Notes: generated by a model from the letters alone, not told the origin. A DNA stretch of 41,656 nucleotides from Macrostomum lignano (GCA_002269645.1 NIVC01003818.1:1-41656), one strand, 5' to 3'. Numbered from the stretch's first letter, positions 8,851-41,656 are shown. Numbers and translations are program-made.

Positions 8851-8858
8851 AGTCTTAC

Positions 8859-9460: not shown

Positions 9461-9509
9461 AAGTTTCCAAGAACTTTGCAATCAATGGAAATTCCACAGA
9501 AGGCCTTAC

Positions 9510-10149: not shown

Positions 10150-10731
<582 letters not shown>

Positions 10732-21672: not shown

Positions 21673-23193
21673 ATGGCCTTCGAGCCGACTATGGATAAAC
21701 AAGCTATTTCTAGGGACGGGGACCCTTCTAAACCCCAACCTCAGTCCGAAGGACCGGCCGGCCCTGCTGGCAGATCCCAACCGACTGATTCAACTGTGGC
21801 AAAGGAAGGACCGGCTGGCTCTGCTGGCAGATCCGACCAGAGCTACCAAACTCAAAATACCCTAAGACCTGCCAGCTCCGCTGGTGGATCTAAGGGAACC
21901 GCGAGCTCTGAGCCTAAAGGACCGGCCAAATCTGGCAGATCCGATGAAGCTCAGCGGGCTCGGCTTGAGCGCAAACGCGCTAAACAACGCGCCAAAAGGC
22001 AGGCCAAGAAGGGAGCTGCGGGGGCCAAAGCGGCGGCGTCCACCATGGATGCTGAAGCGACTGGAGTCCCAAGGCAACCAGGCGGGCCGGCCGGTGGAAG
22101 CTCCAGTAGTTCAGCGGCGGCGCTCCCTGGAGCTGCTGCCGCGGCTGCTGAGGCCGAAACCACGGCGCAACAAATGGCCACTGCCAACAAGGAGGTTCCT
22201 TCGGGAGCTACCTTTGCGGCGAAGGCCAAGGCCAAAATCCCGGGAGTGATCATCCAAGGTCGCGACCAGGACTGGACCACTGATCAGCTTCAAAAAGTGT
22301 GGAGTGCTGTTGACTCCTATCTGATTGAGCTGACTGTCGAGGAGGGAATCTCCATCGGCGTTGAGCGGATGGTGCTGCGAAGCACATTCGTTCTTATTGC
22401 TCCTAGCAGCGAGGAGGACGCTCGGCGGCTGCTCCAGCGGCTACCGACGGTCTCCTTGGATGCTGACCTTGGCGGAGCTCTTTTTCTTCGCGAGGGCCAG
22501 CGTCCAAAGACGATACCCTATGTGGTTTTCGTCCCTGCTAAGAGCACCGCAGCTGGACCAGACGTTATTCGCCGGGTCCTACTGCGTCTGAACCCCGACC
22601 TCCCTGCTAGTGGACTGGTGTATCACCGTAAAGTCCGCAGGGGGGAGACGGGCAACTCAATTGTCCTCGGCCTTTCCAGCACTTGGGCGAGTCGGTACCC
22701 TAATGGATCCTCTTTCCAGCTGGGTGCCCTCAAGCTCAAGTTGCGCCGAGGAAAGTCTGCCAAAGGGAAGGCTACTGCCAACCCCGGCATCTCCGGCAAG
22801 AGCGGGGCGCAGTCTAAGGCCCAAGGAAAGGCGCAAGCCGATCCCAAAGCCAAAGCTGCATCTCGCCCCTCTGCTAGCAGCAGTTCGGCGACCGCGGTAA
22901 CGGCTCCGGCCGAGCCCCGGGAACCAAACCTGCCAGTCGGAGAAGGAGTTGAGGACGAGGCCGGGTCTTCGGAATCCGAGCTCTCCTCGGCCACCTTGGT
23001 GGGGTCTGAAGGTAAAGATGCAGGTGAGGAAGCTTCCTCCATCCTGTCATCGGAGCCTGAGGACTCTGCTGGGGGGCCGGTGGGGGTGAGGAGGCCATGG
23101 ACGTCGACCAACTCCCATCTCCCAGTCAAGCCCCAGCGGCCTGGGACGAGGACGATCTGTTGTCCAAGTCTCCTTGATGGCCCTGGGCTCTAG
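21673..23193 (+). CDS. Non-LTR retrotransposon ORF1 (low-complexity N-terminus, basic coil, central domain); C-terminus probably frameshifted at G6 23071-23076
   Basis: Long ORF directly upstream of ORF2; first ATG at 21673 (track start 21616 is a GTG). Confidence 0.82.
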   Translation: MAFEPTMDKQAISRDGDPSKPQPQSEGPAGPAGRSQPTDSTVAKEGPAGSAGRSDQSYQTQNTLRPASSAGGSKGTASSEPKGPAKSGRSDEAQRARLERKRAKQRAKRQAKKGAAGAKAAASTMDAEATGVPRQPGGPAGGSSSSSAAALPGAAAAAAEAETTAQQMATANKEVPSGATFAAKAKAKIPGVIIQGRDQDWTTDQLQKVWSAVDSYLIELTVEEGISIGVERMVLRSTFVLIAPSSEEDARRLLQRLPTVSLDADLGGALFLREGQRPKTIPYVVFVPAKSTAAGPDVIRRVLLRLNPDLPASGLVYHRKVRRGETGNSIVLGLSSTWASRYPNGSSFQLGALKLKLRRGKSAKGKATANPGISGKSGAQSKAQGKAQADPKAKAASRPSASSSSATAVTAPAEPREPNLPVGEGVEDEAGSSESELSSATLVGSEGKDAGEEASSILSSEPEDSAGGPVGVRRPWTSTNSHLPVKPQRPGTRTICCPSLLDGPGL

Positions 23194-23216
23194 CCAGATA
23201 TTGCATTTAATACAGT

Positions 23217-26200
23217 ATGACTAAGCTCCACGCTGCCAAAGGAGCGACATTCTGTCTGCAAATAAATTTACAGCATTGCGTATCTGCGTCAGTAAATCTG
23301 ATGAAGATTGCTGAGCTGTACAGGCCAGGCCTCATCCTGATCCAGGAACCCTGGATGCGCAACGGTAAGTTGCCCAACATTCCCTCTGGCTACTCTGATT
23401 TTTATGTGTGTGGCCCGGGGAACAGCCGCCCTAGAGCGGCTATCCTCGCTGCTAGCCATCTCCAGGCTTGGCTGAGGACTGATCTCTCTGATGGAGACCT
23501 TTGCGTCATCCAATCTAATCATTTCTCTCCGCGTACGTGTCTTGTTGCCTCGGTTTATATCCCAGGCGACAGAGACCCTGCTCCCGAGAGTTTACTGCGC
23601 CTTGCGCAGTACTGCGAGTCCCAGAACGCTGAGCTGTGCTTAGGGGGCGACCTCAACGCGCACCACAAGCACTGGGGCAGCAAAGATACCAACACTAGAG
23701 GAGAGGAGCTTCTGGCCCTCATCTCTAACACAAACCTCATGCTCTGCAACCGCGGCAGCACTCCTACCTTTAATAATGGCAGATGGACCGAGGTCCTCGA
23801 CGCCACACTCGTTACCCCAAGACTCTTTGACAGAGTCAAGGAGTGGAGAGTCTGGTCTGAGGAGCCCTCCCTGTCTGACCACTGCTTTATCGCCTTTAAT
23901 ATCGCGGACACTAAAACCCAGTCTCCGATCACTTGGAGACGCAATATCCGCAACACTGATTGGGCGGCCTACAAGGCTGCCCTTGATCTGCACCTGCAGG
24001 AACTCACGGACTTACGTCCGATTGAGACCTGCGAGGATGTGGATCATATGGCTGAGACGCTGACAGGTTGCATTATTGCAGCCTACGAAGCGGCTTGTCC
24101 TGCTCGCGCCTACAGAGGCAAGACCTCGGCGCCGTGGTGGAACCCGGAGCTGGGGAAACTCAGGCGGAAGGCCAAAAGCCTTCATCGCCGTGCCATGAAG
24201 ACCGGAAACCCGGAGGACATGGAGCTTTTCCGGCAAGCCTCCCGCAATTTCAAATCTGAAGTGCGCAAGGCCAAGGAATGTAAGTGGCGCCAATTCTGCA
24301 ATGAATTGGATCAAGACAGACCTACTTCTAGGCTTGTCAAGGCCCTTACAATGGACAAAATGTCCAAATTAGCCATGATCAAAAAAGATGATGGCTCTCT
24401 TACTAAAGACCCTGAAGAAGTGCTTCAGCATATGCTTAGCACATTCTTCCCGAGGGTACCTACTGCTAGACCGGAGCCCAACCATTCGATGGATGGAGCC
24501 ACCCTAGCGGCGGGCATTGTCACTGAAGACCTAATCGCTCGTGCGGTCAGAACCTTCAAACCCTTCAAATCTCCTGGACCTGATGGTATCTACCCTGTTC
24601 TCCTTCGTGAAGCAGCCAAGATACCCTCGTTCCTGAGACTCACCCGCAATCTTATGCGGGCCTCTATCCAGCTGGGATACGTTCCCAAAAGCTGGACTGA
24701 AGCTCGAGTAGTCTTTATTCCCAAACCTGGGAAGGGTGACTACCAAAGCGTCAAGGCCTTCCGGCCAATTAGCTTAACGTCAGCAATGCTTAAGCTCACT
24801 GAGAGGCTTATTCTCTGGCGGCTGCTCTCCTGCGAGCTGACAGCGATGCCCCTCAGCAATAATCAGCACGCCTTCCGTACCGGGAGGTCGACTGACAGCG
24901 CCCTGCATGCGATTGTCGAAAAGATTGAACGGGCGGTACTGGGTGACGGTTACGCCCTGGCTCTCTTTCTTGACATTGTTGGCGCCTTCGACAACGTTAT
25001 CTTTGAAGCGTTTCAGAGGGCCCTTCAAAATCGCAAAGCTCATGCTACCCTCATACGGTGGATCATGTACATGATCTCCAACCGTACGGTCACTGCCCAA
25101 CTTCTTGGGCAAACTGCCTCCACCAGAGTCTGTAAGGGTGGACCCCAAGGCGGAGTCCTCACCCCGACGCTCTGGAACCTGGTCATGGACGCTCTTCTGA
25201 GTGACTCCCGACCTGACCCCGTCTTCAAAGTCGGGTATGCTGATGACGTCACGGCCATTGTGGCAGGACCGTCTCCCAGCACGCTCAGGGATCTGATGCA
25301 GAGCTTTATCCGCAAAGCAGAATCCTGGGCCAATGACAATGGTTTGGAACTCTCTGAGCCCAAAACCGTTGCCATTATGTTTACCAGCAGACTACGCTGG
25401 AACATACGTCCTCTGCAGCTCTACGGCAGAGATATTGCCTTCGCGCACCAGACCAGATGTCTCGGGGTCACACTTGACCACCGGCTCAACTGGTCCTTCC
25501 ACGTGAAAGCAAAAGCTAAGCGTGCCTCAGCCATCCTGGCCCAGCTCCGACGAGCACTTGGCACTTCTTGGGGTCTATCCCCAAAGCGGCTTTGGTGGAT
25601 CTATACTTCCGTAGTTAGACCTGCCATTACGTACGCCTCTGTTGTCTGGGTTAGCGCTACCCAGGTCAAAAGCCATGCAGACCTGCTCAACACGATCCAA
25701 GGCAGAGCGTGTAGGCTCATCTGCAACGCCACCAGGTCCACGCCCTTTGCTGGCATGGGGGCCTTTCTTAATCTTCCGCCTCTTGACCTCTTCATCAGGG
25801 GTGAGGCGGCTAGAACGACGCGGCGTCTAATTGATGCCGGCGTCAAATTCATTTACATGAGAGCACCTGCTAAGCGGAACCTTGTCCCGCATAGCGATCT
25901 GTGCCTCAACTTTCTCAACGAGTGTCAGGCCAATCGCGTCTTCACCGATGGCATTGCCTCAACGCTCAACCTGAGACAGCGCTACTCCGTAGCTATCGAC
26001 TCGCGCGATAACATCAATGACCATTGGAACCCTGGTGAGCTTCATTGCTACACCGACGGTTCTAAGCAGTCAGCCAACACCGGCTTTGGTGTTGGAATCT
26101 TTCTGAACGGGAGGGTCATCGCTACCCACGCTCAATACACTGGGGTCAACTCCAGTGTTTTCCAAAATGAAGTTCTGGCCATCAGCTCCTGCACTGCAGA

Positions 26201-26957
26201 GCTTCTCGCCACTGGCGTTACTGGTAAGAACATCATTTTCCATTCGGACAGCCAAGCTGCCTTGCACGCCATCAGTGGCTGCAGCACCAACTCTGCTACA
26301 GTCCTTGACTGTATCAAACTCCTCAATATGTTGGGTTCCGCCAACAAAATTACCCTTAAGTGGGTTCCGGGGCATGTGGGGATCCGAGGAAATGAGTTGG
26401 CTGACACCCTTGCAAAAGTTGGTGCCTCCGGCTCCTCTCTCGGCCCCGAACCTCTTGTCCCGATTCCTGGCTGTGTCATCGACTCGCGCATCAAAGCGTG
26501 GATCAGGACTCAGCACCGCTCGACTTGGGCGAACCGCACGAACTGCAGGCAATCCAGAGGCGCTGTCCCTCAGCCCTCTCACCAGCTCCGGAAGCTCCTC
26601 TTGCGCCTCTCGCGCAGAGACATCCGGGCTGCCACCATGACCCTCTCTGGTCACGGCTGCTTCTCCAGGCACCAGTACCTGCAGGGCAACGCCACCAACG
26701 CCACCTGTAGTTTCTGCAACTCAGGTGACGAAACCGCTGAGCATTTCGTCAGCATCTGTCCCGCCTTCACGCGGGCCAGACTCACTTACCTCGGGCCACA
26801 CACATCTATTACTGAAGCGTGCAAACCCGAAAACTTTAATCAGCTCATGCGCTACCTTCGGGCCACCCGCAGGGCTGAACTCTCCTTTCCAGAGAGCACC
26901 ATAGCTGCTGGCGACACTGGGGGACCTCCCTGGGCGGCGCCAACCCTCCGTCCATAG
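23217..26957 (+). CDS. Non-LTR retrotransposon ORF2: APE endonuclease, RT, RNase H and CCHC finger (1246 aa, intact)
   Basis: QINLQH..LIQEPW, GGDLNAHH..WGS, SDH; PGPDGI, RPISL, PQGGVLTP.LW, GYADD; YTDGS, VFQNEVLA, HSDSQAAL, WVPGHVGIRGNELAD; CSFCNSGDETAEHFVSIC. Confidence 0.96.
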   Translation: MTKLHAAKGATFCLQINLQHCVSASVNLMKIAELYRPGLILIQEPWMRNGKLPNIPSGYSDFYVCGPGNSRPRAAILAASHLQAWLRTDLSDGDLCVIQSNHFSPRTCLVASVYIPGDRDPAPESLLRLAQYCESQNAELCLGGDLNAHHKHWGSKDTNTRGEELLALISNTNLMLCNRGSTPTFNNGRWTEVLDATLVTPRLFDRVKEWRVWSEEPSLSDHCFIAFNIADTKTQSPITWRRNIRNTDWAAYKAALDLHLQELTDLRPIETCEDVDHMAETLTGCIIAAYEAACPARAYRGKTSAPWWNPELGKLRRKAKSLHRRAMKTGNPEDMELFRQASRNFKSEVRKAKECKWRQFCNELDQDRPTSRLVKALTMDKMSKLAMIKKDDGSLTKDPEEVLQHMLSTFFPRVPTARPEPNHSMDGATLAAGIVTEDLIARAVRTFKPFKSPGPDGIYPVLLREAAKIPSFLRLTRNLMRASIQLGYVPKSWTEARVVFIPKPGKGDYQSVKAFRPISLTSAMLKLTERLILWRLLSCELTAMPLSNNQHAFRTGRSTDSALHAIVEKIERAVLGDGYALALFLDIVGAFDNVIFEAFQRALQNRKAHATLIRWIMYMISNRTVTAQLLGQTASTRVCKGGPQGGVLTPTLWNLVMDALLSDSRPDPVFKVGYADDVTAIVAGPSPSTLRDLMQSFIRKAESWANDNGLELSEPKTVAIMFTSRLRWNIRPLQLYGRDIAFAHQTRCLGVTLDHRLNWSFHVKAKAKRASAILAQLRRALGTSWGLSPKRLWWIYTSVVRPAITYASVVWVSATQVKSHADLLNTIQGRACRLICNATRSTPFAGMGAFLNLPPLDLFIRGEAARTTRRLIDAGVKFIYMRAPAKRNLVPHSDLCLNFLNECQANRVFTDGIASTLNLRQRYSVAIDSRDNINDHWNPGELHCYTDGSKQSANTGFGVGIFLNGRVIATHAQYTGVNSSVFQNEVLAISSCTAELLATGVTGKNIIFHSDSQAALHAISGCSTNSATVLDCIKLLNMLGSANKITLKWVPGHVGIRGNELADTLAKVGASGSSLGPEPLVPIPGCVIDSRIKAWIRTQHRSTWANRTNCRQSRGAVPQPSHQLRKLLLRLSRRDIRAATMTLSGHGCFSRHQYLQGNATNATCSFCNSGDETAEHFVSICPAFTRARLTYLGPHTSITEACKPENFNQLMRYLRATRRAELSFPESTIAAGDTGGPPWAAPTLRP

Positions 26958-29070: not shown

Positions 29071-30814
29071 TCGCGCAGGATAAACTTCTCCGATCCGAGT
29101 GTTCGTTCCCGCTCTGTGGCTCTGTTATGCCATAAAAATCTTTCTGCCGTACTAAGCAGCTTATCCATACTGGTATACTCTTCCCCATTCAGCTTTGATG
29201 AAGCTAAAGAGCTTGGTTGCTTTCGTTTTATAACACTAAATAAAACTTTCTGATTCAAACAAAGATTCTCTCTCTAAGTAGCCCCCTCGCTACATGTAGT
29301 CTCAAAACCGGACTTAACGTTTCAAGAGAAATAAAAAACACCACACGCCATTTGAAATTACAAATTTTCTAAATTTCAAACGTGCTACTCGATTTTCTGA
29401 TGTTTGTCTGCGTTAACGGGGAATTTTAAATTGGTGCTTGTAAAATTTAAAACGTCATGGTGTGCAATAACCGCGAATATTGGGGTGTCTGCCTTCTTGG
29501 AGTTTTTCGAGTCCTAAGACGCAAAAACGCCACGATTCGAATCCTAGCGATCTGATTTTGCGTGGAAAAAACTTTTTTTCAATTTGAAAATGCCTGTTCT
29601 ACGGACTTGACTGAGTCAATAGAACATTTCTGCGCACCTTCATGGCTCTGATTAAAAGAAGCTCGTGCGAACTCCTTAGCTGATCGAACCGTCTTATCAG
29701 TGTTCAGTTGCAGATTCTAGAATGATCTCAAATAGCAGTAGGGCGCGGTGGGAAGATAAGGAGACAGCAAAAAGCTGCCGAGATCGGCGGCGGATCGAGA
29801 AGAAAAGGAGACTTTCGAGCTGATAAGACGCGACTGCTGCCTGTAAATATAGGAATTGCCTTGGAGACGATTTCGAACTTTCGACTCGACTAAAAGCCGA
29901 AGAATGCGCATTTTCATTGATTAGACAAATTTAATGCTGGTATCAGTGAGTCGCAACGTATTCGCATCGTCGTTGGTCTTCGGTACTGCTTTATGCTTGA
30001 AAGTGCATGCAAATGTACACGCAATGTATATTAGCGTGGCTGGTAGGGGATTCCATAATTATACGAGTAGCTTTTGATGCTTATAGCAGCGATCTTCAAG
30101 CCAATCTTGCAGCATCCAGCGATGGGTCGAACCGCCCCGAATTGAATCGTTCAGCTCCATGTACGGTTCTGGGCTCGCTTGCTTGTGTTGCTGTGCTTCA
30201 CTTTGCTTCACCTGTCGCCCACCATTCTCGGTACATGTAAGAAAATCTTACCATAGCAACGGTAACAATTTGATGAAAGTGAAAGCCGTTTCTGCGATCT
30301 CTTTTTGTCTAAACAAGCTTCTAATCTTCAATTTGATTTTTAACTTTCGTGGCGAGGCAGGTGGGTGAAGTCGCTGGTTTCGCCCGCATGGTGATAAAAA
30401 CCATAGCGCCACTTTTTCAAGCAATGCATTCAAGTTGCAGATAGCAAACTCGAAAGTGAAGATAAAAGATTCCAGTGGCATTATGTGGCTGGCGCTATCA
30501 GCTGAGCAGCAGGTGATCAGAGCTGCCCCGCTCGGGCAACCAGTCAAAAAGTTCAAGTGCCGGTGGCTGCGCCGCTCACCCCTCTCTGCAATGCGTTGAC
30601 GCACGCTCAAAATAATTTTCAGACAGCCAAAACTCACCTGGCCTGGCCTCGACCAGTGCCAGCTGGCAGCGAGAGGCGTTCACCGCACGGCCTATTTGTT
30701 GTTCCGTCGTCATGGCAGCCGCGATAAAACCCCAACAGCAGCTGATAAATGTCGCCCAAGCCGCGAGTCCGAACTGCGAATCAGTTTTTTGGCGACCTCG
30801 AACCCACTGGGAAA

Positions 30815-31924
30815 ATGAGGCCGCTCCAAGCAACGCTGGCTGCAGCCCTGCTGCTGGCCTTCTGCGCCGGCTTCAATGCCGAATCAATCATCGGAACCGT
30901 TCAAGTGATGTACTCCGGCTACAAGTTCAATGGCTTGAAGGTGAACGCCTCCGGAGTAAACGAGTCGAAAGAAATTCACCGATTTCTCAGCATTCCGTAC
31001 GCTCAGCCGCCCACCGAAAACCGGCGGTTCGCCAAGCCCGAAGCGCTGGACTTCAGCAGAGACGTCCAAATCGATGCCAAAGAGCAGCCTCCGCTGTGCC
31101 CGCAGGACAACTCCACCAAGAGCCTGCCGTACAGCGAGGACTGCCTGTACATGAACATCTGGTCGCCTGACACCACCTCGGGTACCAAGTACCCCGTGCT
31201 GGTCTACATCCACGGTGGACGCTTCGAGACTGGCGGCATCGCTGAGCCGGAGTACCAGGGCGAGACCCTCGTGCGAAATCAGAACATCGTCTTTGTGACA
31301 ATCAACTACCGACTGGGCGCCACTGGCTTTCTCTACCTGGATTCGACACTGATGCCAGGTAACTTCGGCCTGTTGGATCAGCGCCTGGCTCTGAAGACGA
31401 TCACTGATATGATAAGTGCTTTCGGCGGAGACCCGAACAGAATCACCCTGGCCGGCCACGGAACCGGCTCCGCTTCTGTCGGGTTCCACATCGCCACTCA
31501 AGATGTCCCGGTCACCCGTGCGGTGATGATGGGCGGCTCGCACCTCATGCCCCTGGTCTGGTCGAACGACATCGATGCAGTGAGGGGCGTTAGTGAGCGC
31601 TTTGCGAACATTCAGCTGAACTGCGCTCGTGGGGAGGGCAAGCTTCAAGAGGTGATCGAATGCCTGCGAAATGACATCTCCATTGAGAAGCTGATCGAAG
31701 AGCAGAAGAACTACGAGAAGCTCTACATTTCGCTCGAGTTCATGCCCGTGCTGGACAAAGAGTTCTTTAACTTTATGGACCCGCTAATAACTTGGGGCGA
31801 GCGCCGTAAGAACGTCACTTTGCTGATGGGCGTCACCGCTGACTCCGGAATCGAGTTCGCCCTCAACTCGCTGCGCACTCGCAACCTGACCACCGACATC
31901 CTCAACCGCGATGTGTACTACGAG
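30815..31924 (+). CDS. Multi-domain cholinesterase-like protein, exon 1 (signal peptide plus most of domain A1)
   Basis: MRPLQATLAAALLLAFCAGFNA signal peptide; FLSIPYAQPP, SEDCLYMNIW, YIHGG, NYRLG, GNFGLLDQ, FGGDPNRITLAGHGTG; donor GAG|GTGAGT (phase 0). Confidence 0.92.
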
Positions 31925-31959
31925 GTGAGTAGCTTTTCCTATGCTAGGCGAATGTCCCC

Positions 31960-32375
31960 GCGGATATTGTTCATCCGGCTATCCAAGACCACCTGCTCTG
32001 TTGTAACAGTTGTTGCGACATTGAGCAAACTCAGCAGTTTTAAATTATTGATCGTTGTAGGACTGACTTTAGGCTCAATATACTTAAATTCATGTACATT
32101 AAAAACCAGAAACCAAATCTGACACATTCAACTTTCTCACAGTGGTGCGGGCCATTTACTCAAGGTATTCTAAGTGAAGGCACAACCCGATCATTGTACT
32201 CGCAATCTCTGCTCACTTACTCTGAACATTCTGCCCCTGATATGCCCTTGGACTGTACAGTAAACATTTGTTCTCTATTTATCTCTTATAAAAGTTGTTG
32301 CGTGAGTGAATATACATCAGACCCTGAAGATGGCCCTTGTTGGACCGAAACGCTATGGAAGAATTTAATCTAACT
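31960..32375 (+). mobile_element. Penelope-like element 3' remnant (GIY-YIG C-terminus plus hammerhead-like motif) in intron 1
   Basis: Translates as AIQDHLLCCNSCC...F*IIDRCRTDFRLNILKFMYIKNQKPNL, a typical PLE C-terminus. It is followed by TATAAAAG and CTGAAGA..GG.CC..GGACC-GAAAC (32324-32351). Confidence 0.65.
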
Positions 32376-32477
32376 TAATCTACGAGCTATGTTGATTTTC
32401 ACATTTATTTTCCATTGTTCGTTTACTTGTAAATCAATAAGCCTCATCCTCACCCCGCCTTGCCCGTCCCGCCGCAG

Positions 32478-32886
32478 ATCCTGCGCCAGCAGTTCGTGCA
32501 CTACCCCCGCTTCCCCACGGCGCTGGATGACACCGGGCTGAAATTCCTCCAGCTGTCGCACACCGAGTGGAACGACGCCCAGAACAAAGAGCTGCTGCTG
32601 AAAAAATGGTCCGAGGCTCTGGGCGACTTCAGCTTTCTCTGCCCGACCCTCTACGCCCTGTTCGATGATGACAGGCCGCAGCCGGGAGAGGACATGAACG
32701 CCTACCTGTACTACTTCGGTGCTCCGGACCCGTTTAGGGACAACGAGGCGCCCGGACACGTCAACGATGTGCGCTACTTCCTTGGCGTCCCGGACGGCCC
32801 TGGCCTCCCGTACCCGAGCGAGCACAACGAGCTGGCCAAGCGCATGATGGAGGATCTGGCCAACTTTGTCACCACCGGAAGGCCGA
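32478..32886 (+). CDS. Cholinesterase-like gene exon 2 (domain A1 C-terminal part)
   Basis: Acceptor CCGCAG|ATC; GDFSFLCP, GHVNDVRYFLG, FVTTGRP; donor A|GTGAGG (phase 1). Confidence 0.85.
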
Positions 32887-33067
32887 GTGAGGAAATTGTT
32901 TAGAATATGAATTTCAAAGGAAACAGCCCATTCCAGTAAATGTCAAATCCTCCTAGAATGAACTGAATTTCCTGCCATTCCTACAGCAGTGGGTAATCCA
33001 ACTCACACCCACTCTCATTGCCTCCTTTGCATTCTTATGACGAATTTTTCGCGGACTCTCAGCCCAG

Positions 33068-33574
33068 TCAAACCCAGCGCTAAATGGCAACCCCGGGATT
33101 TCACACACACAGACAACAACTGGCGCAGCGTGATCGCCGGGGACTGGAACTACAACAGCTACCTGCCGGTGCAGGACCCCGGCCTCTACGGCTTAACTGG
33201 CGGCTTCGCCATCCGCCGCTGCCGCTGGTGGTACGACACCCTCAGCTTCGTGAACCGCCTCGTGCCGGGCGACTCTGCAAAGCCGATGAGCCCGCTGCGG
33301 CAGGACCCGTTTCTGCTGGACGGCAGCACCATCGGTGCGGCGCCGGCCCGCTCGAAGCCGCAGCAAGAGGCTGCCGCCAACAATTTCCAGCCCACATCCG
33401 CGCAAATCATTGACAATGCCACTGTGGAGCTCACCGAGGTCGGCGCCACTGTCAGGGGGCACCGGCTCTCCGCGAACGGGAAGGAGATTGAGCGATTCCT
33501 CGGCATTCCGTACGCGCAGCCGCCAACCGGCGATCTGCGATTCGCGAAGCCGGCTCTGAAGGACATTGCGAACG
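33068..33574 (+). CDS. Exon 3 (end of A1, linker, start of domain B1)
   Basis: Acceptor CCCAG|TC restores TGRPIKPSAKWQP; RCRWW; ERFLGIPYAQPPTGDLRFAKP; donor G|GTGAGT (phase 1). Confidence 0.82.
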
Positions 33575-33909
33575 GTGAGTTACATTAAACATTGCAGCTG
33601 CAAGAAAAAGAGGCAGATCAAGGTTTTCGGTCCGAAAGTCAAACCCACAAGCAAAGATGAGAAAAAATATTCTGACAATTCAGCAGAATAAGCCAGCTCA
33701 TTTTTTTATAAAACAGTTTGCAGACTACAAAATTTCGCTTAGCCAAATCCAACGAAATTTCGTTACATCCAACGAAAGCCTTCTACTGCCAAAATGCTAT
33801 TAAATAATTGCTAGCAATTATTTCCTATCTTCCTATATCTCATATTTCCCATATCTTCCTATCTCGCCATATCTCGAAATTTGGAGGATTTTCATGTGTA
33901 GCGTCCCGC

Positions 33910-34640
33910 TGCTGCAGTTGTTCATGTACCTGTGCAATATTAACAGTTGTTCATGTACCTGTGCAATATGAACAGTTGTTCATGTACCTGTGCAATATAA
34001 ACAGTTGTTGATGTACCTGTGCAATATGAACAGTTGTTCATGTACCTGTGCAATATAAACAGTTGTTGATGTACCTGTGCAATATTAACAGTTGTTAATG
34101 TACCTGTGCAATATGAACAGTTGTTCATGTACCTGTGCAATATTAACAGTAGTTCATGTACCTGTGCAATATGAACAGTTGTTCATGTACCTGTGCAATA
34201 TGAACAGTTGTTCATGTACCTGTGCAATATGAACAGTTGTTGATGTACCTGTGCAATATGAACAGTTGTTCATGTACCTGTGCAATATGAACAGTTGTTC
34301 ATGTACCTGTGCAATATTAACAGTAGTTCATGTACCTGTGCAATATTAACAGTTGTTCATGTACCTGTGCAATATTAACAGTTGTTCATGTACCTGTGCA
34401 ATATTAACAGTTGTTCATGTACCTGTGCAATATGAACAGTTGTTCATGTACCTGTGCAATATGAACAGTTGTTCATGTACCTGTGCAATATTAACAGTAG
34501 TTCATGTACCTGTGCAATATTAACAGTTGTTCATGTACCTGTGCAATATTAACAGTAGTTCATGTACCTGTGCAATATGAACAGTTGTTCATGTACCTGT
34601 GCAATATGAACAGTTGTTCATGTACCTGTGCAATATTAAT
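33910..34640 (+). repeat. 29-bp minisatellite (TGTACCTGTGCAATAT[G/T]AACAGTTGTTCA), about 25 copies, in intron 3
   Basis: Direct periodicity. Confidence 0.96.
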
Positions 34641-35626
34641 CAAGGACCACTAGCAGTATATATACTCAGCAACATCGAAAAGTCGCCATCACAGATCCGT
34701 CTGTGATCGCCGCTTTTGAGAGTGCAGGTAGTCTCTCAATCTTTGCGAGTGACGCAACTTAAATACGCCGCGGCAGACTTGAGTTGAGAAATGAAGTGGG
34801 GGAGCTGTGTGCGAGGGTTGGACGGATTAAAGCTACCCCGATGAGTTTTCTCGCATCTTTTATTTCAGAATGGTCCAAGAGAAATTGCTCACTGGCGCAT
34901 AGAGTGGCGACTTTTCAATGTTGCTGAGTATACTTCTTAGAACATTTGAATTTTGCTCCAATGTTAGAAAATTTTCAAGCGCGCAGCGACACAAACTCAG
35001 CTGGCCCGCAGGCATAAAAACCCTGCCGAGGGAGGGGGGTGGGCGCAAGCCGGGGGTTGGCGGTGTACACAAAACCCGGTTAGTGCTGGCAGCACAAACC
35101 AGTTCAGAAGGTCTGTGCAGAGGACGGCGTGTGGCTGAGGCTGACTCAAGCCAGACAACTGTCTCAGTCTGCCTGCGCGAGGTTTGACCCCCACTTTTAG
35201 TGTGTCACAAGACACTTTCAAAACGAGAAAAATTCGTCGAAATAAATTTCTTAGGAAAAATCACAAATAAAAATCACAATACCAACAACTTGTAAAGCCG
35301 CATTGGATAAAAGCATGCTGGCTTCAATTAATTTATCACCGGTAGTATGGAAGGTACGCTCGTAGTTTTGGGCTACAGGCTCTTAATGACTCCATCATTA
35401 GTTTGAAATGGCACTGGGTCTTCAAGTAAATTTATTAAAGCCTTTCGATTTACGCTCAAAACAGAAAAATGCACTTTTAGATTTTATCAGCGACCTTCCA
35501 ATGTCAGAATCTTCCAGATAGTTCCGACTTCTGCCCCTTCTGCAAGCTGTAGAAGTCCTTTCCTCAATTCCAAAAGCACTCCTGTTGAGCATCGCATAAT
35601 TCTTATTTCTTCAATTTACTTTGCAG

Positions 35627-36483
35627 CTACCATCGATGCGCAAACGATGCCTAAGGCGTGTCCGCAGGCGTGGAATACGACCTTGGAAGAGGACGAGGAC
35701 TGCCTCTACCTCAACATCTGGACTCCGAGACCTAGCCTGACAGCCAATGAGTCTCAGCAGGTCCCCGTACTGGTGTACATTCACGGTGGCTTCTTCGAAG
35801 TCGGAGGCATCAACGATCCGTACCGGAGTGGCGAGAAGATTGTCGAGCTGCAGGACGTCGTCGTGGTTACCATCGGCTACCGACTGGGAGTTCTGGGATT
35901 CCTGCCCTTCTCGGCCGAGGGCAGCCGCGGAAACTTTGGCCTCTTCGATCAGGAGATGGCGCTCAAATGGGTGGAGGCGAATATTCACCACTTCGGTGGC
36001 AACGCCAGTCTCATCACCGCCGTGGGCGACGACGCCGGAGCCGTGTCCATTGGCTACCACCTGATCCGCAACGAGACCCGGATCTCCAGGGTGATTCTCC
36101 AGACGGGCAGTCCGTCTATGGCCTATCCCCTGAACAACGACACCGATGGCACCCGCATGCGCATCGAACAATACCTGCAGCTAATGGGATGCAACAACAG
36201 CACCACGGACGCCCAGTTGGCTTGCATGCGGGCCAAGTCCGTGTCGGATATCAACAGTGTCTACACTAACGAGTTCGCCAACAAGTTCGGTCCGGAGGCC
36301 CTGGTCACAGTCGACGGAGACTTTCTCAAGGAGGACCCGTGGCATTCGGTGCAGCAGGGCGACATGTCCCAGGTGCCCATGATCGTCGGATTTGTCGACA
36401 GGCCGGGAAATGAGATCATCAACCGCAGGATTCGCTTCGGCGAGCTGGACTTGGCAAACATTTCTTATGATGAAGTGCTGCAG
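35627..36483 (+). CDS. Exon 4 (domain B1 core)
   Basis: Acceptor TTGCAG|CT; CPQ..EDCLYLNIW, HGGFF, GNFGLFDQ, ITAVGDDAG; donor CAG|GTAAGG (phase 0). Confidence 0.9.
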
Positions 36484-36564
36484 GTAAGGCCTCTAAAATA
36501 TGTGGGTGAGTTTTATAAGTACTCGTAGATGAATAATTCACTATGCAACCATAAACACTTGCAG

Positions 36565-36847
36565 AACATCGTTAACGCATCATACTACAACCCGAGGCTA
36601 CCTAAGGAGCTGAAGCAGCCCGGAGCCACGCTGATCGGGATGCAATACCGACCGCCGCTTCTGCATAGGCAGGTGCTGATTGACAGCCTTAGTGAGGCCT
36701 ATAGTGACCGCTTCTACACCTGCGGAAACAACGAATACCTGCAGCAAGTGATCTCTAAGCGGCATCCGCTTGATGCATTCCTATATCACTATGTGTTCTC
36801 CGAGAAGTCCAATGTTGAAAATATTACATCCGATGGAGCAAGCTTGT
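36565..36847 (+). CDS. Exon 5 (domain B1)
   Basis: Acceptor TTGCAG|AAC; SDRFYTCG, FLYHYVF; donor T|GTAGGT (phase 1), at the position homologous to the exon 10 donor. Confidence 0.82.
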
Positions 36848-36944
36848 GTAGGTGCCATTTTATTGCATTTTTATTAGCAGCCGAAAAAAAATCAATCCAA
36901 AAAAACCAAATAAATCAATATATATTCACAAATCTACTCTACAG

Positions 36945-38299
36945 CCGAGGACACCTTCTATCTCTTCGGAAATCCTTTGCAAGGACCTGAGTGGAACGAT
37001 GAACAGAAGAGTCTGTCCGAAAAGATGATCGAATTATTCACGCACTTCGCCGAGACAGGAAATCCCAATCCTGAAAACAGTCTCGACCTGTGGTGGGAGT
37101 ACACGGCAAATCTAAAGCCCTACCTTGTGCTCGATGCGCAGGTGCACAATGTGTCGGTAAATTGGGGCTTCCGGATTAACGACTGCGGATTCTGGCAGGA
37201 GGTTCTTCCCTACGTCAATGAGCTGAAGGAGCCGCCGGAACCAACCAGGCCTCCGATCGGACCAGAGGGAGAAATTATCGATGAAATCATCATTGAAATC
37301 GACCTCGGAAGAACGCAAAACAGGATCAGCATCGCCGGAGACGTGGTTCGACTAGCAAACGGAAAGATCATCAAGCGATTCCTGGGTCTGCCCTATGCGG
37401 AAATGCCTCTCACTCGGTGGAGCTACGCTTCATTTCCGAAGGGTGGCAACTACACAGCGAAGTCTATGCCACCAGCCTGTCCGCAAACCATCAATCCAGT
37501 TCCGGAAAGAAGCATGTCTGAGGATTGTCTGTACATAAACGTCTTTTTTCCAAACGATACTTCAACGACGTACCCGACAGTAGTGTTCCTGCACGGTGGG
37601 AACTACACGAGTGGAGCTAACAGTCTGCCAGAGTATCGAGGTGAGCAGCTTCTCGAGAACGAGGACGTTATTCTCATCACCGTCAACTACCGACTGGGCG
37701 CGCTCGGCTTCCTGTTCCTGGACGACGAGAAGCTGCCCGGAAACTTCGGTCTGATGGACCAACGGCTCGCTCTCGACTTCATCCAAAGAGTGATTCCCTT
37801 TTTTGGAGGCAGCAGGACGCAGATCACTCTGATGGGTCACGGGACGGACGCCGCGTCGGCCGGCTTCCATGCTGTCACGGATTCGAAGGACTTCTTCGAC
37901 CGGATGATCTTGATGGGCGGATCTCCGTCGATGCCGCTGGCTTGGTCGAGCTCGACTCAGAAGGTTCTTGAAGATAGCGAGCATTTTGTCAATGTTCAAC
38001 TCGAATGCGCAAGAGGCCCACTTGATTCGGTTTTGGAGTGTCTGAGAAATCTTACATTGGATAAGATCATGACGGAACAGCTGAACATGCAGCACTCGAG
38101 AGATCACTTGGTATTCCTGCCCGTGTTCAATCAGTCGTTTTTTAACTACACGCACCCGTACGACGCTTGGTCCAAGGGCGAGATGGACAAGCCGTACATG
38201 ACAGGCGTGGGCTCAGACTCTGGTCGCTACTACATCGAGCAGTCGCTGGCTCGACGGAACATCTCCTGGGAGTCGCTGAACCGAACTATTTTCGAAAGG
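36945..38299 (+). CDS. Exon 6 (end of B1, Pro-rich linker, most of domain A2)
   Basis: Acceptor CTACAG|CC; EDTFYLFGNP, DCGFW, PTRPPIGPEG; RFLGLPYA, SEDCLYINV, ITLMGHGTD; donor AGG|GTAAGA (phase 0). Confidence 0.9.
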
Positions 38300-38394
38300 G
38301 TAAGAAAAACTAACTGTTTTGAGCTATTTAAAATAACGGAAAACATAATAACTCATTGAGAATATGATTGAAATGCAAATGGCAAACGTTCCAG

Positions 38395-38794
38395 ATCGTG
38401 GAGCTGCAGTTTAACTACTTCCCCCGCTTCCCGGAGAGGAACACGGCTACCGGAATTCAATTCCTCAAGCTGGCCCTCACTGAGTGGAACTACTACGACT
38501 ACAACAAGCGGATCAAGGCTATCTGGTCCAGGGCGATGGGTGACTTTAACTTTCTGTGCCCCATCTGGGAGGCCACGAGCGACCTACTGAGGGCCAAACA
38601 GCACGACATTCACATGTACTACATAGATGTGGAGGACCCGTTGCGGGTACAGGAGGATCTGATCGGTGCTGACCACTGGGGCGACATCCGCTACCTGTTT
38701 GGCGAGCCGCTCAGGAAGGATTTGTACCCGGAGGTTCACAAGAACCTTTCCCGACTGATGATGCACGACTTTGTCCAGTACATTGGGGGATCAG
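38395..38794 (+). CDS. Exon 7 (domain A2 C-terminal part)
   Basis: Acceptor TTCCAG|ATC; GDFNFLCP, DHWGDIRYLFG; donor G|GTGAGA (phase 1). Confidence 0.86.
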
Positions 38795-39219
38795 GTGAGA
38801 GCCAAAAAACGTTAGGGAAGCGTAGTACGATTTTATTTTCAATTATTTCCTATTTCAAAGAAAGACTTTCGTCAGCAGAATTTCTGCATAAGAAGAAAAA
38901 CAGAAGATAGGAGTAAAGAAAACCTGGACCACTGACTTTTAAACCGAAATGCATATTGTGTCCATCTTAAATGCTTGGTTGGCCATAAATTCAATTTAAG
39001 CATCGTACTCGTAGCGTAGTTTTAAACAGTGTTTTAATCAAAGTTTGAAAAAATATTTTTGTACGAGCTAGCTATTGACTACCAATATGCAAGAAAAGTT
39101 TAAAAAAATCAGACATATCGATCATGCTGTTCTGTAGAGTTTGTTTAAATGACCACTTGATAGTGCTCATATTAAGTGCTGTTTTCATGTACAGAGCAAG
39201 CTGTCTTCCCAATTTGCAG

Positions 39220-39689
39220 CACCATCTCACTGGAATGCAACAAGCCAGGAGACGTCAGACTTTCTACTGTACGACATCCTGCAAACGGACTCCGGCGGTC
39301 CGGGAAACCTGGTCTCTGTCATGGTGCCGGACGGTTTCGGCCTGAACACTGGCCGGTGCCCGCTCTGGAAAAACGAGCTGCCCTACGTCAAATCGTTTGT
39401 CAGCGCCCCCTTCCAGGAAGAAGAGACTTCGAAAATAACGTCAGTGCAAGCAGAAAGCGACCAGCAATCGGAAAGACCAGCAGCGTAAAAGACGAATCGG
39501 AGTTTAATCTCTACGAAGTCGTGTCGAACTATACTGTGGACGTTCCCGGCTTCGGCAAGGTGACGGGGCAGACCATCATGACTCTGTCGAACAATATCAC
39601 CATGTCCCAGTTTCTCGGAGTTCGGTATGCGCAGCCGCCTGTCGGAAATCGTCGATTGGCAAAGCCAGTGAAGCCACATACAACATCAG
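39220..39689 (+). CDS. Exon 8 (end of A2, linker, start of B2); contains a frame break at about 39480-39488
   Basis: Acceptor TTGCAG|CA; frame 1 gives GFGLNTGRCPLWKNELPYV up to TAA at 39486. FLGVRYAQPPVGNRRLAKP is in another frame. Donor G|GTGCAC (phase 1). Confidence 0.72.
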
Positions 39690-39783
39690 GTGCACATTTT
39701 CATTAATTTTGAGCCAAATTTATAATAGTTACTCCATATAAAACAATGCATTTAACCTAAACATTTTTATATCTCAATTCCAG

Positions 39784-40634
39784 ACTCAAAGCATTTGGCA
39801 CTGACAATGCCGCCAATGTGCATCCAGAGAGAGCATCACAACCGGAACATGTCTGAGGATTGTCTCTACCTCAATATTTGGACTCCAAGACGCGCTGGCA
39901 GGAACGTGAATGACATCCCCGTGCTTGTTTTTATTCATGGAGGCTTTTTTGAAGTCGGAGGTATTAGCGAGGATCGCTGGCAGGGAAGCATGATCTTGGA
40001 TCACTACGATGCAGTCGTGGTTACCATGAACTACCGACTTGGAGCTTTCGGCTTCCTGTCACTCGACAACAAGGAGGTGATCGGAAACTACGGTCTGTGG
40101 GATCAGGAGATGGCCTTGCAGTGGGTGGCCGATAACATTGAGAGCTTCGGCGGCAACAAGAACCGCATCACCCTGATGGGCGTGGAGGCTGGCGCCGTGT
40201 CGATCGGTTACCACATGGCCAGGCCAAAGCAGAACCGGTTTCACCAGGTCGTCCTCATGACCGGCTCTCCGTACATGTCCTACCCGCTGTCGGATGACAT
40301 TGAGGAAGTGCGTGACCTGCAATACAGCTTTTTGCGAAGACTGCGATGCCCAGTCGACCCAGCTGAAGCTCTAGAGTGCATTCGGAGTCAACCGGCTGAT
40401 TCAATTAATGAGCAGCAGGACGTGTTCCAGCAACTGTTCCAGCGGCTTGAATTCCCACCCATTATTGATGGCGACTTCATCAGGTTGGATCCTTGGACGA
40501 TGGACCCGAGCACACTGATGCAGGTGCCCATGATATTCGGAGGAGTGGACCGACCTGGAAACACGTTTATCGAAAGACTGGTGGACACTGAGATCCTTGT
40601 GCCAGAGAACTTTAGTCATAACGCGTACTTAACG
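39784..40634 (+). CDS. Exon 9 (domain B2 core)
   Basis: Acceptor TTCCAG|AC; SEDCLYLNIW, HGGFF, GNYGLWDQ, ITLMGVEAG; donor ACG|GTGAGT (phase 0). Confidence 0.9.
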
Positions 40635-40886
40635 GTGAGTAATTATCTTTAAAGTTTTATGCAATCTGAAAATTCAATTGTGTCAGGAATTTCACTCACG
40701 TATTTTTTACCTATAAAGACAACATTTATCAAAGTTTTCTTACGTACGAGCTATCAATAAATAAAAAGTAATGGATGCCCTTTAATAGCTCGTACTCATA
40801 ATGTTAATATTTTTTGCTCAGGACGTCTCAAAAACCGCACACTTTAATTCAATCCAAAAGAACAAGTCGGTACTCTGAACTTTTAG

Positions 40887-41175
40887 ATTCTGCAAAGCAT
40901 GAACGAATTCTTCCCGAGATACCCCAAGAGCATGACTGTGTCCGGGCGGACGGGCCTGCGCAACCACTTCATGCAGTACAACGGACAGGGCAATTTTGAG
41001 CGGGATCTCAGAGACCTAGGACTAGCGCTCAGCGATCGCTACTTCACCTGCGCGAATAACAAGTTCCTTGATGCGTACTCCAAAGCCTCGGGCAAGCCTG
41101 TTTACAATTATCTGTTCACTGAGGGCAAGGAATACAAGGGAGACACAGAGCTTCCCCTGCAGCATGCAAGTCTTT
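40887..41175 (+). CDS. Exon 10 (domain B2)
   Basis: Acceptor TTTTAG|ATT; SDRYFTCA, VYNYLF; donor T|GTGAGT (phase 1). Confidence 0.86.
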
Positions 41176-41297
41176 GTGAGTCGAAAGCTGCAGTATTGAT
41201 TTTCGTTTTCTCTCACAGCATTTTAAAGTCAAACTGCTTAAGCTCGTAAACTTAAAAGCTTAAGAATCTGCAACACTTATTAATTTTTCCCTTTCAG

Positions 41298-41656
41298 TCG
41301 AGGACGCATTCTATGTGTTCGGCAATCCCTCCAGCCCCGGTCCAATTGTGCCAGACCAACAGCGGCGGCTGTCCGACGCCATCATGCACGCCATCGTTCA
41401 GTTTGCTCGAACCGGCCGTCCATCCGACCTTTTGAAATGGGACCCGTACGACTCTGAGAAGAAGTCACATCTGCTGCTCGACGCCGACCATCTCCCTCCG
41501 ACGATGTATCCTGATGGGTACAGGAGACAGGAGTGCGGCTTCTGGGACCACACTTTACCGTTCGTCAACAGCCTGAACGACACTGCGCCGCCGCCGACCA
41601 GACCTCCGATCGGTCCCGATGGCGGCATTATTGAGGAAATCATCATTGAAATCGAC
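41298..41656 (+). CDS. Exon 11 (end of B2 and second Pro-rich linker); open at the window edge
   Basis: Not in the ORF track. Acceptor TTTCAG|TC; EDAFYVFGNP, FARTGRP, ECGFW, PPPTRPPIGPDGGIIEEIIIEID; no stop before 41656. Confidence 0.88.

What the first reader, a model, noticed from the sequence alone, without database searches (positions are those of the whole stretch)
30815..41656. Giant secreted poly-cholinesterase-like protein built from repeated A-B di-domain modules
Seen: 11 exons join with matching GT-AG phases (one frame break, listed separately) into a single chain with one N-terminal signal peptide and four complete carboxylesterase/cholinesterase-fold domains. Domains 1 and 3 resemble each other, as do 2 and 4. 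The chain is still open at the window edge, in the same linker that precedes domain 3, so a fifth domain probably follows. No internal signal peptide separates the domains. Known: AChE, neuroligin, gliotactin, neurotactin and glutactin carry one such domain, and thyroglobulin carries one at its C-terminus. Inference: this is a heavily N-glycosylated extracellular scaffold, adhesion, mucus or ligand-sequestering protein. The A-B pair may form an intramolecular version of the helix-bundle dimer used by AChE and neuroligin. I do not recall this architecture being characterised.
Basis: partly seen in the sequence, partly recalled or inferred. Interest (0 to 1): 0.85.

Follow-up and report, generated by a model that had tools for sequence, protein, structure and literature searches.

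The report
Giant eight-domain dead-cholinesterase membrane protein
This stretch is the first half of a flatworm (Macrostomum lignano) gene for a huge cell-surface protein made of eight inactive cholinesterase-like domains in a row. The layout is real and unusual, but the gene is already in GenBank as a hypothetical protein and nobody has studied it.

Summary
Window 30815-41656 (+) carries 11 GT-AG exons with matching phases, one N-terminal signal peptide and four full PF00135 domains (E 1e-87 to 1e-111). Domain junctions lie inside single exons, so these are not tandem genes.

The window is a whole 41,656-bp contig of the Macrostomum lignano Mlig_3_7 assembly. The gene is BOX15_Mlig018316g2 (PAA49670.1, partial). 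My exons 1-8 reproduce that transcript-based protein exactly.

The single frame break is a 1-nt deletion at 39439, relative to copies g1 and g3. It creates a stop at 39486.

The intact g1 locus encodes 4,684 aa:
- a signal peptide;
- eight domains (A1 B1 A2 B2 A2' B2' A3 B3), each A-B module ending in TRPPIGP;
- a Thr/Ser/Pro stalk, one transmembrane helix and a 69-aa tail ending -STDL.

So the protein is membrane-anchored, not secreted. All eight domains lack the nucleophile serine but keep six cysteines. dN/dS is 0.14-0.19.

The domains form a Macrostomum-only clade with a single-domain dead-esterase membrane paralog. They are separate from tandem-esterase membrane proteins of Styela, Lingula and sharks.

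Function is unknown. My inference is a CLAM-like surface adhesion or coat protein. AlphaFold2 did not settle the proposed intramolecular A-B dimer. I rate it a new variant of a known kind, of moderate interest.

The parts
30815..30883 (+). Start codon and signal peptide (MRPLQATLAAALLLAFCAGFNAE)
   Evidence: This is one of only two strongly hydrophobic segments in the full-length protein. The ATG is the conserved start: the upstream ATG at 30749 is followed by an in-frame stop in copy g1. No signal-peptide predictor was available, so this was judged by eye.
30815..31924 (+). Exon 1 (signal peptide plus the first ~350 aa of domain A1), phase 0 donor GTGAGT
   Evidence: identical to GenBank model P0190
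32478..32886 (+). Exon 2 (middle of A1), ends in phase 1
33113..33574 (+). Exon 3: end of A1, the 45-47 aa A1-B1 linker, and the start of B1. An alternative in-frame acceptor at 33068 would add 15 aa.
   Evidence: The domain junction lies inside one exon.
33915..34636 (.). 29-bp minisatellite (24.9 copies) inside intron 3
   Evidence: Intron 3 is 2052 nt here and 2381 nt in g1.
35627..36483 (+). Exon 4 (core of B1, including the GDDAG motif at the nucleophile-elbow position)
36565..36847 (+). Exon 5 (B1), donor GTAGGT, phase 1
36945..38299 (+). Exon 6: end of B1, the TRPPIGP hinge, and about 370 aa of A2 (GHGTD elbow)
   Evidence: It lies within a single 481-codon stop-free stretch (36914-38356) that spans the domain junction.
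38395..38794 (+). Exon 7 (A2)
39220..39689 (+). Exon 8: end of A2, the linker, and the start of B2. It contains the frame break.
39439..39440 (+). Site of the 1-nt deletion (AAC-GTC here, AACCGTC in g3). This is the frame break.
39486..39488 (+). Premature TAA produced by the frameshift. It is the end of the annotated protein PAA49670.1.
39784..40634 (+). Exon 9 (core of B2, GVEAG elbow). It is intact, but out of frame with the upstream part in this copy.
   Evidence: the homologous exons of g1 are in frame
40887..41175 (+). Exon 10 (B2)
41298..41656 (+). Exon 11: end of B2, the TRPPIGP hinge, and the first residues of the next A domain. It is cut by the contig end.
30887..33264 (+). Domain A1 (aa 25-557), non-catalytic COesterase fold
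33400..37228 (+). Domain B1 (aa 603-1135)
37283..39401 (+). Domain A2 (aa 1154-1686)
39515..41578 (+). Domain B2 (aa 1725-2256 of the frame-corrected reading)

Best explanation
Shown:
- The region is the 5' half of copy g2 of the Macrostomum lignano gene Mlig018316. There are three copies, 94-99.7% identical, in a partly duplicated genome.
- The intact locus encodes a ~4,684-aa type I membrane glycoprotein. It has a signal peptide and eight cholinesterase-like domains arranged as four A-B modules.
- Each module ends in a proline-rich TRPPIGP hinge. A 73-aa Thr/Ser/Pro stalk, one transmembrane helix and a 69-aa Ala/Gly/acidic tail ending -STDL follow.
- Every domain keeps the AChE fold and its six cysteines but has lost the nucleophile serine. 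It is Gly in A domains and Asp or Glu in B domains. The acidic triad member is also lost, and B domains have lost the histidine too. The protein therefore cannot be a serine esterase.
- The domains remain under purifying selection.
- The array grew by internal tandem duplication within the Macrostomum lineage. Its closest relative is a single-domain, equally inactive membrane paralog (Mlig028046) with the same stalk-PPIGP-TM ending.
- The window's copy carries a 1-nt deletion in the A2-B2 linker. This would truncate it to a soluble three-domain product, or it is an assembly error.

Inferred:
- The protein works like the cholinesterase-like adhesion molecules (neuroligin, gliotactin, neurotactin). 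The dead esterase folds would serve as protein-binding modules displayed on the cell surface, and the -TDL C-terminus might reach PDZ scaffolds.
- A chain of eight ~60-kDa domains would be much longer than an ordinary intercellular cleft. I therefore favour a surface-coat or long-range adhesion role on a free epithelial surface (about 0.4) over a synapse-type trans-cellular bridge (about 0.3).
For: Gene model and splice sites.

Exact match to the transcript-based GenBank protein of this contig. The annotation method is described in PMC5730564.

Four PF00135 domains in the window. The public model P0002 has six and the partial model P0004 has seven matched stretches. My model of L001 has eight.

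Only two hydrophobic segments, the signal peptide and the TM helix.

Triad status, from the alignment to human AChE plus the eight-domain alignment.

Six cysteines per domain, and NG86 dN/dS of 0.19 (A2/A2') and 0.14 (B2/B2').

Window against g1: 50 synonymous and 19 nonsynonymous codon differences.

Fold: Foldseek best hit is human AChE, TM 0.86. PDB sequence best hit is AChE, E 4e-61.

Phylogeny: the M. lignano A, B and Mlig028046 domains form a clade with 100% bootstrap support, separate from other multi-domain proteins.

Architecture of the paralog P0051.

TRPPIGP follows every B domain and precedes the TM helix; sequons are enriched, 64 against 33 +/- 5.

The frame break is a 1-nt deletion relative to g1 and g3.
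Against: - No expression, localisation or binding data exist for this gene. Function is inferred from architecture only.
- The eight-domain mRNA is not demonstrated. The two full-length transcript-based public models (g1, g3) have six domains. They jump from B2 to B2' inside a 150-nt identical tract. I read this as short-read assembly collapse, but it could be a real isoform or haplotype.
- The PDZ-ligand reading of -STDL is a motif match only.
- Exon and intron divergence between the copies is the same, about 1.05%. Selection is visible only in the synonymous/nonsynonymous ratio.
- The nearest sequence relatives outside Macrostomum are active cholinesterases, not known adhesion molecules.
Confidence: 0.75

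Rival explanations
1. The four domains are separate tandem esterase genes that only look joined.
For: Tandem COesterase arrays are common and are often fused by gene predictors. For example, the Lineus longissimus 2475-aa model is four copies, each with its own signal peptide.
Against: Each junction (end of one domain, linker, start of the next) lies inside one stop-free exon: exons 3, 6, 8 and 11. There are no internal signal peptides or start contexts. The RNA-seq-based annotation yields one ORF across three to six domains, and its pipeline cuts transcripts at experimentally supported trans-splice and poly(A) sites.
Confidence: 0.02
2. The window's copy (g2) is a real, recently disabled or truncated allele or paralog. 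It would give a soluble SP-A1-B1-A2 protein of 1,714 aa, or an NMD-degraded transcript, while g1 and g3 carry the function.
For: The 1-nt deletion at 39439 is present in a Pilon-polished assembly. GenBank annotates the truncated ORF. The DV1 line carries redundant duplicated blocks, so one copy is free to decay.
Against: The rest of exon 8 differs from g1 at only one base. The ~2.2 kb of coding sequence downstream has no stops. Of the 8 downstream codons that differ from g1, 5 are synonymous. A single-base indel in a PacBio-derived short contig is a typical consensus error.
Confidence: 0.4
3. The protein is a non-hydrolysing ligand sink (bioscavenger or carrier) that binds choline esters, lipids or toxins in its gorge remnants, rather than an adhesion or coat protein.
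For: The domains are closest to true cholinesterases. B1 keeps a Trp aligned with the choline-binding Trp86 of human AChE. A domains keep the triad histidine.
Against: The Cys69-Cys96 omega loop, which walls the AChE gorge, is about half as long here: 13-14 residues between the cysteines against 26. The Trp is not kept in the other B domains. Membrane anchoring with a mucin-like stalk is the layout of the adhesion-type family members.
Confidence: 0.12
4. Each A-B pair folds back into an intramolecular copy of the AChE/neuroligin four-helix-bundle dimer, giving four pseudo-dimers on a string.
For: The unit of duplication is A-B-TRPPIGP. A-to-B linkers are long and disordered: 37-47 aa, with pLDDT below 50 at residues 531-578. 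B-to-A linkers are short and proline-rich, 18-21 aa. The C-terminal helix motif W...LPYV is the best conserved C-terminal feature in all eight domains. The canonical dimer uses helices alpha3(7,8) and alpha10 (PMC5943944).
Against: AlphaFold2 gave pTM 0.56 for A1-B1 and 0.60 for B1-A2. Neither pairing is placed confidently and A-B is no better than B-A. No PAE or coordinates could be inspected.
Confidence: 0.25

Closest known systems
Cholinesterase-like adhesion molecules (neuroligins, Drosophila gliotactin and neurotactin; secreted glutactin)
   Same: An extracellular COesterase/AChE-fold domain without a working catalytic triad. Neuroligin and gliotactin are type I membrane proteins with a glycosylated stalk, one TM helix and a short tail ending in a PDZ ligand (general knowledge; PMC5943944). 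Here the serine is lost in all domains, and a stalk, a TM helix and a -STDL end are present.
   Different: Those proteins have one domain; this one has eight in tandem. It is not their ortholog. In the profile search, proteins named cholinesterase scored up to 368 bits and neuroligins 283-291 bits. The domains form a Macrostomum-only clade. No neurexin-type ligand is known for it.
Acetylcholinesterase / butyrylcholinesterase
   Same: Best sequence match (E 4e-61) and best structural match (TM 0.86). All three disulfide pairs are conserved.
   Different: Ser203 is replaced by Gly, Asp or Glu. Glu334 is replaced by Ser, Thr or Pro. His447 is kept only in A domains. The omega loop is halved. The protein is multi-domain and membrane-anchored by its own TM helix.
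M. lignano Mlig028046 (PAA77638.1, P0051), a single-domain paralog
   Same: Closest relative: 496 bits to the A/B profile, and sister to the A clade with 92% bootstrap support. It has a dead nucleophile (GLDAG), a Thr-rich stalk, an EPPIGP motif, then a TM helix.
   Different: It has one domain only, preceded by a ~190-aa mucin-like N-terminal region, and its tail has no -S/T-X-L end. It is also uncharacterised.
Tandem-COesterase type I membrane proteins of Styela clava (XP_077968891, 4 domains), Lingula anatina (LOC106179609, 3 domains) and the sharks Scyliorhinus and Mustelus (3 domains)
   Same: One signal peptide, several COesterase domains with no internal signal peptides, a Ser/Thr stalk and a C-terminal TM helix. 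The membrane-proximal domain lacks the GxSxG serine.
   Different: Their distal domains keep GxSAG, so they may be active. They cluster apart from the M. lignano domains (100% bootstrap), so the tandem layout arose independently. All are unnamed 'uncharacterized protein' models.
Thyroglobulin (C-terminal ChEL domain)
   Same: A large secretory-pathway glycoprotein that uses a dead cholinesterase-like domain as a folding and dimerisation module (PMC5943944).
   Different: Thyroglobulin has one ChEL domain preceded by Tg type 1/2/3 repeats and is secreted. Here Pfam finds only PF00135 (and overlapping alpha/beta-hydrolase models), and the protein has a TM anchor.

Membership tests
Carboxylesterase type B / COesterase fold (PF00135) | Full-length match to the PF00135 profile above the gathering score | tested here: met
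   Four domains in the window, 292-371 bits against a cut-off of 27. The public full-length model has six matched stretches. Foldseek TM 0.86 to human AChE.
Carboxylesterase type B / COesterase fold (PF00135) | Three conserved disulfide pairs of the cholinesterase branch | tested here: met
   Exactly six Cys per domain, at the aligned positions.
Active cholinesterase / carboxylesterase | Ser-Glu/Asp-His catalytic triad with a GxSxG nucleophile elbow | tested here: not met
   The elbows read GHGTG, GDDAG, GHGTD, GVEAG, GHGIG and GAEAG. The acidic residue is replaced by Ser, Thr or Pro. His is kept only in A domains.
Cholinesterase-like adhesion molecules (CLAMs) | Extracellular ChE-like domain lacking catalytic residues | tested here: met
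Cholinesterase-like adhesion molecules (CLAMs) | Single-pass membrane anchoring with a cytoplasmic tail | tested here: met
   Met in the intact copies g1 and g3: TM helix at about residues 4590-4615 and a 69-aa tail. This part lies beyond the contig end, so it is not contained in the window.
Cholinesterase-like adhesion molecules (CLAMs) | Demonstrated adhesive or heterophilic ligand-binding function | not testable with these tools
   No expression or binding data were found.
Neuroligin | Orthology to neuroligins and a single ChE-like domain | tested here: not met
   Eight domains. Neuroligins score 283-291 bits against up to 368 bits for proteins named cholinesterase. The domains form a Macrostomum-specific clade.
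Neuroligin | C-terminal class I PDZ ligand | tested here: inconclusive
   The C-terminus -STDL fits S/T-X-hydrophobic. This is a motif match only.
Neuroligin | Neurexin-binding surface residues | not tested
   No reference alignment of interface residues was made.
Thyroglobulin | Tg type 1/2/3 repeats N-terminal to one ChEL domain | tested here: not met
   Pfam finds only PF00135 and overlapping alpha/beta-hydrolase models.
AChE/neuroligin-type four-helix-bundle dimer (here proposed as intramolecular A-B) | Contact of helices alpha3(7,8) and alpha10 of two domains | tested here: inconclusive
   AF2 pTM is 0.56 for A1-B1 and 0.60 for B1-A2. No coordinates or PAE were returned.

The most novel reading that the evidence does not exclude
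The protein is a rigid, 50-nm-plus surface rod. Each A-B module would fold into an intramolecular mimic of the AChE/neuroligin four-helix-bundle dimer, and the TRPPIGP hinges would string four such pseudo-dimers above a mucin stalk. That would make it a new class of giant adhesion or spacer molecule built only from dead esterases. It would have evolved in Macrostomum independently of a second, unnamed family of tandem-esterase membrane proteins found from brachiopods to sharks.
Probability: 0.2. Interest if true: 0.7.

Novelty: new variant of a known kind. Interest (0 to 1): 0.5.

Why it matters
Dead cholinesterase folds are a classic example of an enzyme scaffold reused for adhesion (neuroligin, gliotactin) or folding (thyroglobulin), and always as a single domain per chain. 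A chain of eight such domains under purifying selection shows that the fold can also be used as a repeat module, much as Ig or cadherin domains are.

It also offers a natural test of whether the canonical ChE dimer interface can be made intramolecular.

M. lignano has working RNAi, in situ hybridisation and transgenesis, so the function is directly testable.

As a by-product, tandem-esterase membrane proteins turn out to exist, unnamed, in tunicates, brachiopods and sharks. This suggests an overlooked branch of the alpha/beta-hydrolase superfamily.

Against this, the sequences are already public as hypothetical proteins and nothing yet points to a specific biological role.

Tried and rejected
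- **Exon 2/3 frame break.** I first suspected a frame break at this junction, because the acceptor at 33062 does not fit. It is resolved by the in-frame acceptors at 33068 and 33113, and the transcript-based model uses 33113.
- **Mini-intron at the exon 8 shift.** I looked for one to explain the shift. No GT...AG pair of plausible length exists, and comparison with g1 and g3 shows a 1-nt deletion.
- **DNA beyond the contig.** Look-ups of P0003 and P0004 to fetch it returned nothing.
- **First structure job.** I re-ran it with the identical region of P0002.
- **AF2 of A1-B1 and B1-A2.** This did not discriminate between pairings. Model coordinates are not exposed.
- **Exon versus intron divergence.** As a selection test this was uninformative, since both are about 1.05%. 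I used the synonymous/nonsynonymous counts instead.
- **Literature.** Searches for the gene ID, for Macrostomum esterases and for multi-domain cholinesterase-like proteins found nothing relevant, as did searches of four papers' supplements.
- **First NJ tree script.** It timed out and was redone with numpy.
- **Tandem-gene and active-esterase readings.** Both were considered and rejected (see the rival explanations).

Full report
**Identity of the sequence**

The best protein matches to the assembled chain are Macrostomum lignano proteins at 94-96% identity. Cluster look-up shows that PAA49670.1, 'hypothetical protein BOX15_Mlig018316g2, partial' (1731 aa), sits on a contig of exactly 41,656 bp. 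The window is therefore a whole contig of assembly GCA_002269645.1 (Mlig_3_7). Two further copies exist. One is g1 on NIVC01001098.1, fetched as L001. The other is g3 on NIVC01000581.1, fetched as L002. The window is collinear with both at 94-99.7% identity. This fits the duplicated DV1 genome described in PMC5730564.

The rest of the window holds protein-kinase exons on the minus strand, an LTR-element pol, a non-LTR retrotransposon and many minisatellites.

**Checking the observation**

Stop-free segments and splice sites give eleven + strand exons, all GT-AG and all with matching phases. With exon 3 starting at 33113, exons 1-8 translate residue for residue into the GenBank protein of this contig (1714/1714 from MRPLQ). 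That annotation was built from RNA-seq (StringTie/TACO plus mapped de novo transcripts), and transcripts were cut only at experimentally supported trans-splice and poly(A) sites. The splice pattern and the continuity across A1-B1-A2 therefore have transcript support.

Pfam finds four full-length PF00135 domains (E 3.7e-97, 1.1e-108, 1.6e-86, 1.4e-110). The ends of domains, the linkers and the starts of the next domains lie within single exons (3, 6, 8 and 11). This excludes separate tandem genes.

The one frame break is inside exon 8. The window reads GAAAATAAC-GTCAGTG, g3 reads AACCGTC and g1 reads AATCGCC. The shift produces TAA at 39486.

The upstream ATG at 30749 is not the start, because g1 has a stop between it and the ATG at 30815.

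**The whole gene**

On L001 the same exon logic, checked against public models at every junction, gives 21 exons and an uninterrupted 4,684-codon ORF. Its parts are:
- a signal peptide;
- eight COesterase domains, A1 B1 A2 B2 A2' B2' A3 B3;
- a 73-aa stalk that is 74% Thr/Ser/Pro;
- one transmembrane helix;
- a 69-aa tail ending -STDL.

A hydropathy scan finds only two strongly hydrophobic segments, the leader and the TM helix.

The public g1 and g3 models have six domains because they pass from B2 into B2'. The switch falls within a 150-nt tract that is identical in the two exons. I read this as short-read collapse, but it needs long-read confirmation.

**Domain anatomy**

- A domains are 38-41% identical to each other (A2/A2' 91%).
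- B domains are 37-48% identical to each other (B2/B2' 75%).
- A against B is 27-36%.
- A-to-B linkers are 37-47 aa. B-to-A linkers are 18-21 aa and proline-rich.
- TRPPIGP follows every B domain and also precedes the TM helix. The repeating unit is therefore A-B-TRPPIGP.

Aligned to human AChE, the nucleophile Ser203 is Gly in A domains and Asp or Glu in B domains. Glu334 is Ser or Thr in A domains and Pro in B domains. His447 survives only in A domains. Each domain has exactly six cysteines at the three disulfide positions. The Cys69-Cys96 loop is about half the AChE length.

N-X-S/T sequons number 64 in the ectodomain, against 33 +/- 5 in shuffles.

**Selection and evolution**

The window and g1 differ at 50 synonymous and 19 nonsynonymous codons. 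NG86 dN/dS is 0.19 for A2/A2' and 0.14 for B2/B2'. The dead domains are therefore constrained.

In a neighbour-joining tree with 100 bootstraps:
- all M. lignano A domains form one clade (100%);
- all B domains form another (96%);
- together with the single-domain M. lignano protein Mlig028046 they form a clade with 100% support.

That clade is separate from the multi-domain proteins of other phyla. Mlig028046 is itself a dead esterase (GLDAG) with a Thr-rich stalk, an EPPIGP motif and a TM helix. A plausible history is a single-domain CLAM-like membrane protein, then an A-B duplication, then multiplication of the module.

An exhaustive HMMER search and a profile search found no closer relative outside Macrostomum. 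The next best hits are proteins named cholinesterase (up to 368 bits), ahead of neuroligins (283-291 bits).

**Structure**

AlphaFold2 models of A1-B1 and B1-A2 (40-row alignments) have mean pLDDT 81.7 and 83.7. The pTM values are only 0.56 and 0.60, and the A-B linker is disordered. Foldseek's best match is human AChE, covering one domain (TM 0.86). The domains are therefore confidently AChE-like.

**What it most likely does**

Shown: it is a type I membrane glycoprotein displaying eight catalytically dead, conserved cholinesterase folds.

Inferred from established knowledge of the family (PMC5943944): such folds act as protein-interaction modules in neuroligin, gliotactin, neurotactin and thyroglobulin. 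I therefore commit to a CLAM-like surface adhesion or coat function. The very long ectodomain favours a free-surface or long-range role. A ligand-sink role and a truncated soluble g2 product are the main rivals.

**Comparison and novelty**

No paper on this gene or on multi-domain cholinesterase-like proteins was found. The proteins are, however, already deposited as hypothetical proteins.

Uncharacterised tandem-COesterase membrane proteins also occur in Styela (4 domains), Lingula (3) and sharks (3). In these the membrane-proximal domain is dead and the distal domains keep GxSAG. They are phylogenetically separate. Some other 'multi-domain' hits are fused tandem genes, for example the Lineus model, where each unit has its own signal peptide.

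I classify the finding as a new variant of a known kind (CLAM-type dead esterases), real and unusual but of moderate interest until a function is shown.

Noticed in passing
window 1-41656: The window is an entire 41,656-bp contig of GCA_002269645.1. The gene is cut by the contig end, not by the window choice. GenBank annotates it as BOX15_Mlig018316g2, partial.
   Followed up: yes
L001 19604-19753 vs L001 ~23640-23790 (B2 vs B2' exons): There is a 150-nt perfectly identical tract inside exons that are otherwise about 75% identical at the protein level. dS is 0.26 for A2/A2' but 1.23 for B2/B2'. This suggests gene conversion between modules, and it is the point where the public six-domain models switch module.
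   Followed up: partly
window 29249-41656 vs L001 and L002: Similarity among the three gene copies is mosaic. The window is 99.7% identical to g3 over 34321-39168 but only 94% over 29249-32315. Synonymous differences to g1 are concentrated in exons 1 and 6. This is consistent with recombination or conversion among copies.
   Followed up: partly
P0019 (Styela clava), P0013 (Lingula anatina), P0006/P0008 (sharks), P0015: An unnamed family of type I membrane proteins with 3-4 tandem COesterase domains, one signal peptide and a dead membrane-proximal domain. It is spread across tunicate, brachiopod and chondrichthyan genomes and is phylogenetically separate from the flatworm protein.
   Followed up: partly
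P0020 (Lineus longissimus, 2475 aa): This RefSeq model is four near-identical esterases, each with its own signal peptide, joined head to tail. It looks like a fused tandem array rather than a multi-domain protein.
   Followed up: partly
window 33915-34636: A 29-bp minisatellite (24.9 copies, 96% matches) in intron 3. The length of this intron differs between gene copies (2052 against 2381 nt).
   Followed up: partly
window 73-9460: A dense run of minisatellites with periods of 17-30 bp (73-483, 1800-1975, 2452-2602, 5375-5914, 6238-7115, 8265-8850, 9228-9460). This fits the reported 15% tandem-repeat content of this genome.
   Followed up: no
window 9420-10677 (-): Two exons of a protein-kinase gene (PF00069, E 1e-28 and 1e-34) on the minus strand, upstream of the esterase-like gene.
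   Followed up: partly
window 13077-16128 (-) and 21616-26957 (+): An LTR-retroelement pol (RVT_1, Integrase_H2C2, rve) on the minus strand. On the plus strand, an apparently intact non-LTR retrotransposon ORF2 of 1246 aa (endonuclease, RT, RNase H), preceded by a 525-aa ORF1-like ORF.
   Followed up: partly
window 30749-30814: An in-frame upstream ATG would add 22 residues before the signal peptide. It is open in this copy and in g3 but blocked by a stop in g1, so it is probably 5' UTR.
   Followed up: yes
P0051 / P0193 (M. lignano): At least two further M. lignano COesterase proteins belong to the same lineage-specific clade. Mlig028046 (P0051) has a ~190-aa mucin-like N-terminal region, one dead domain and a TM helix. 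P0193 (894 aa) is the best hit of the A/B profile search.
   Followed up: partly
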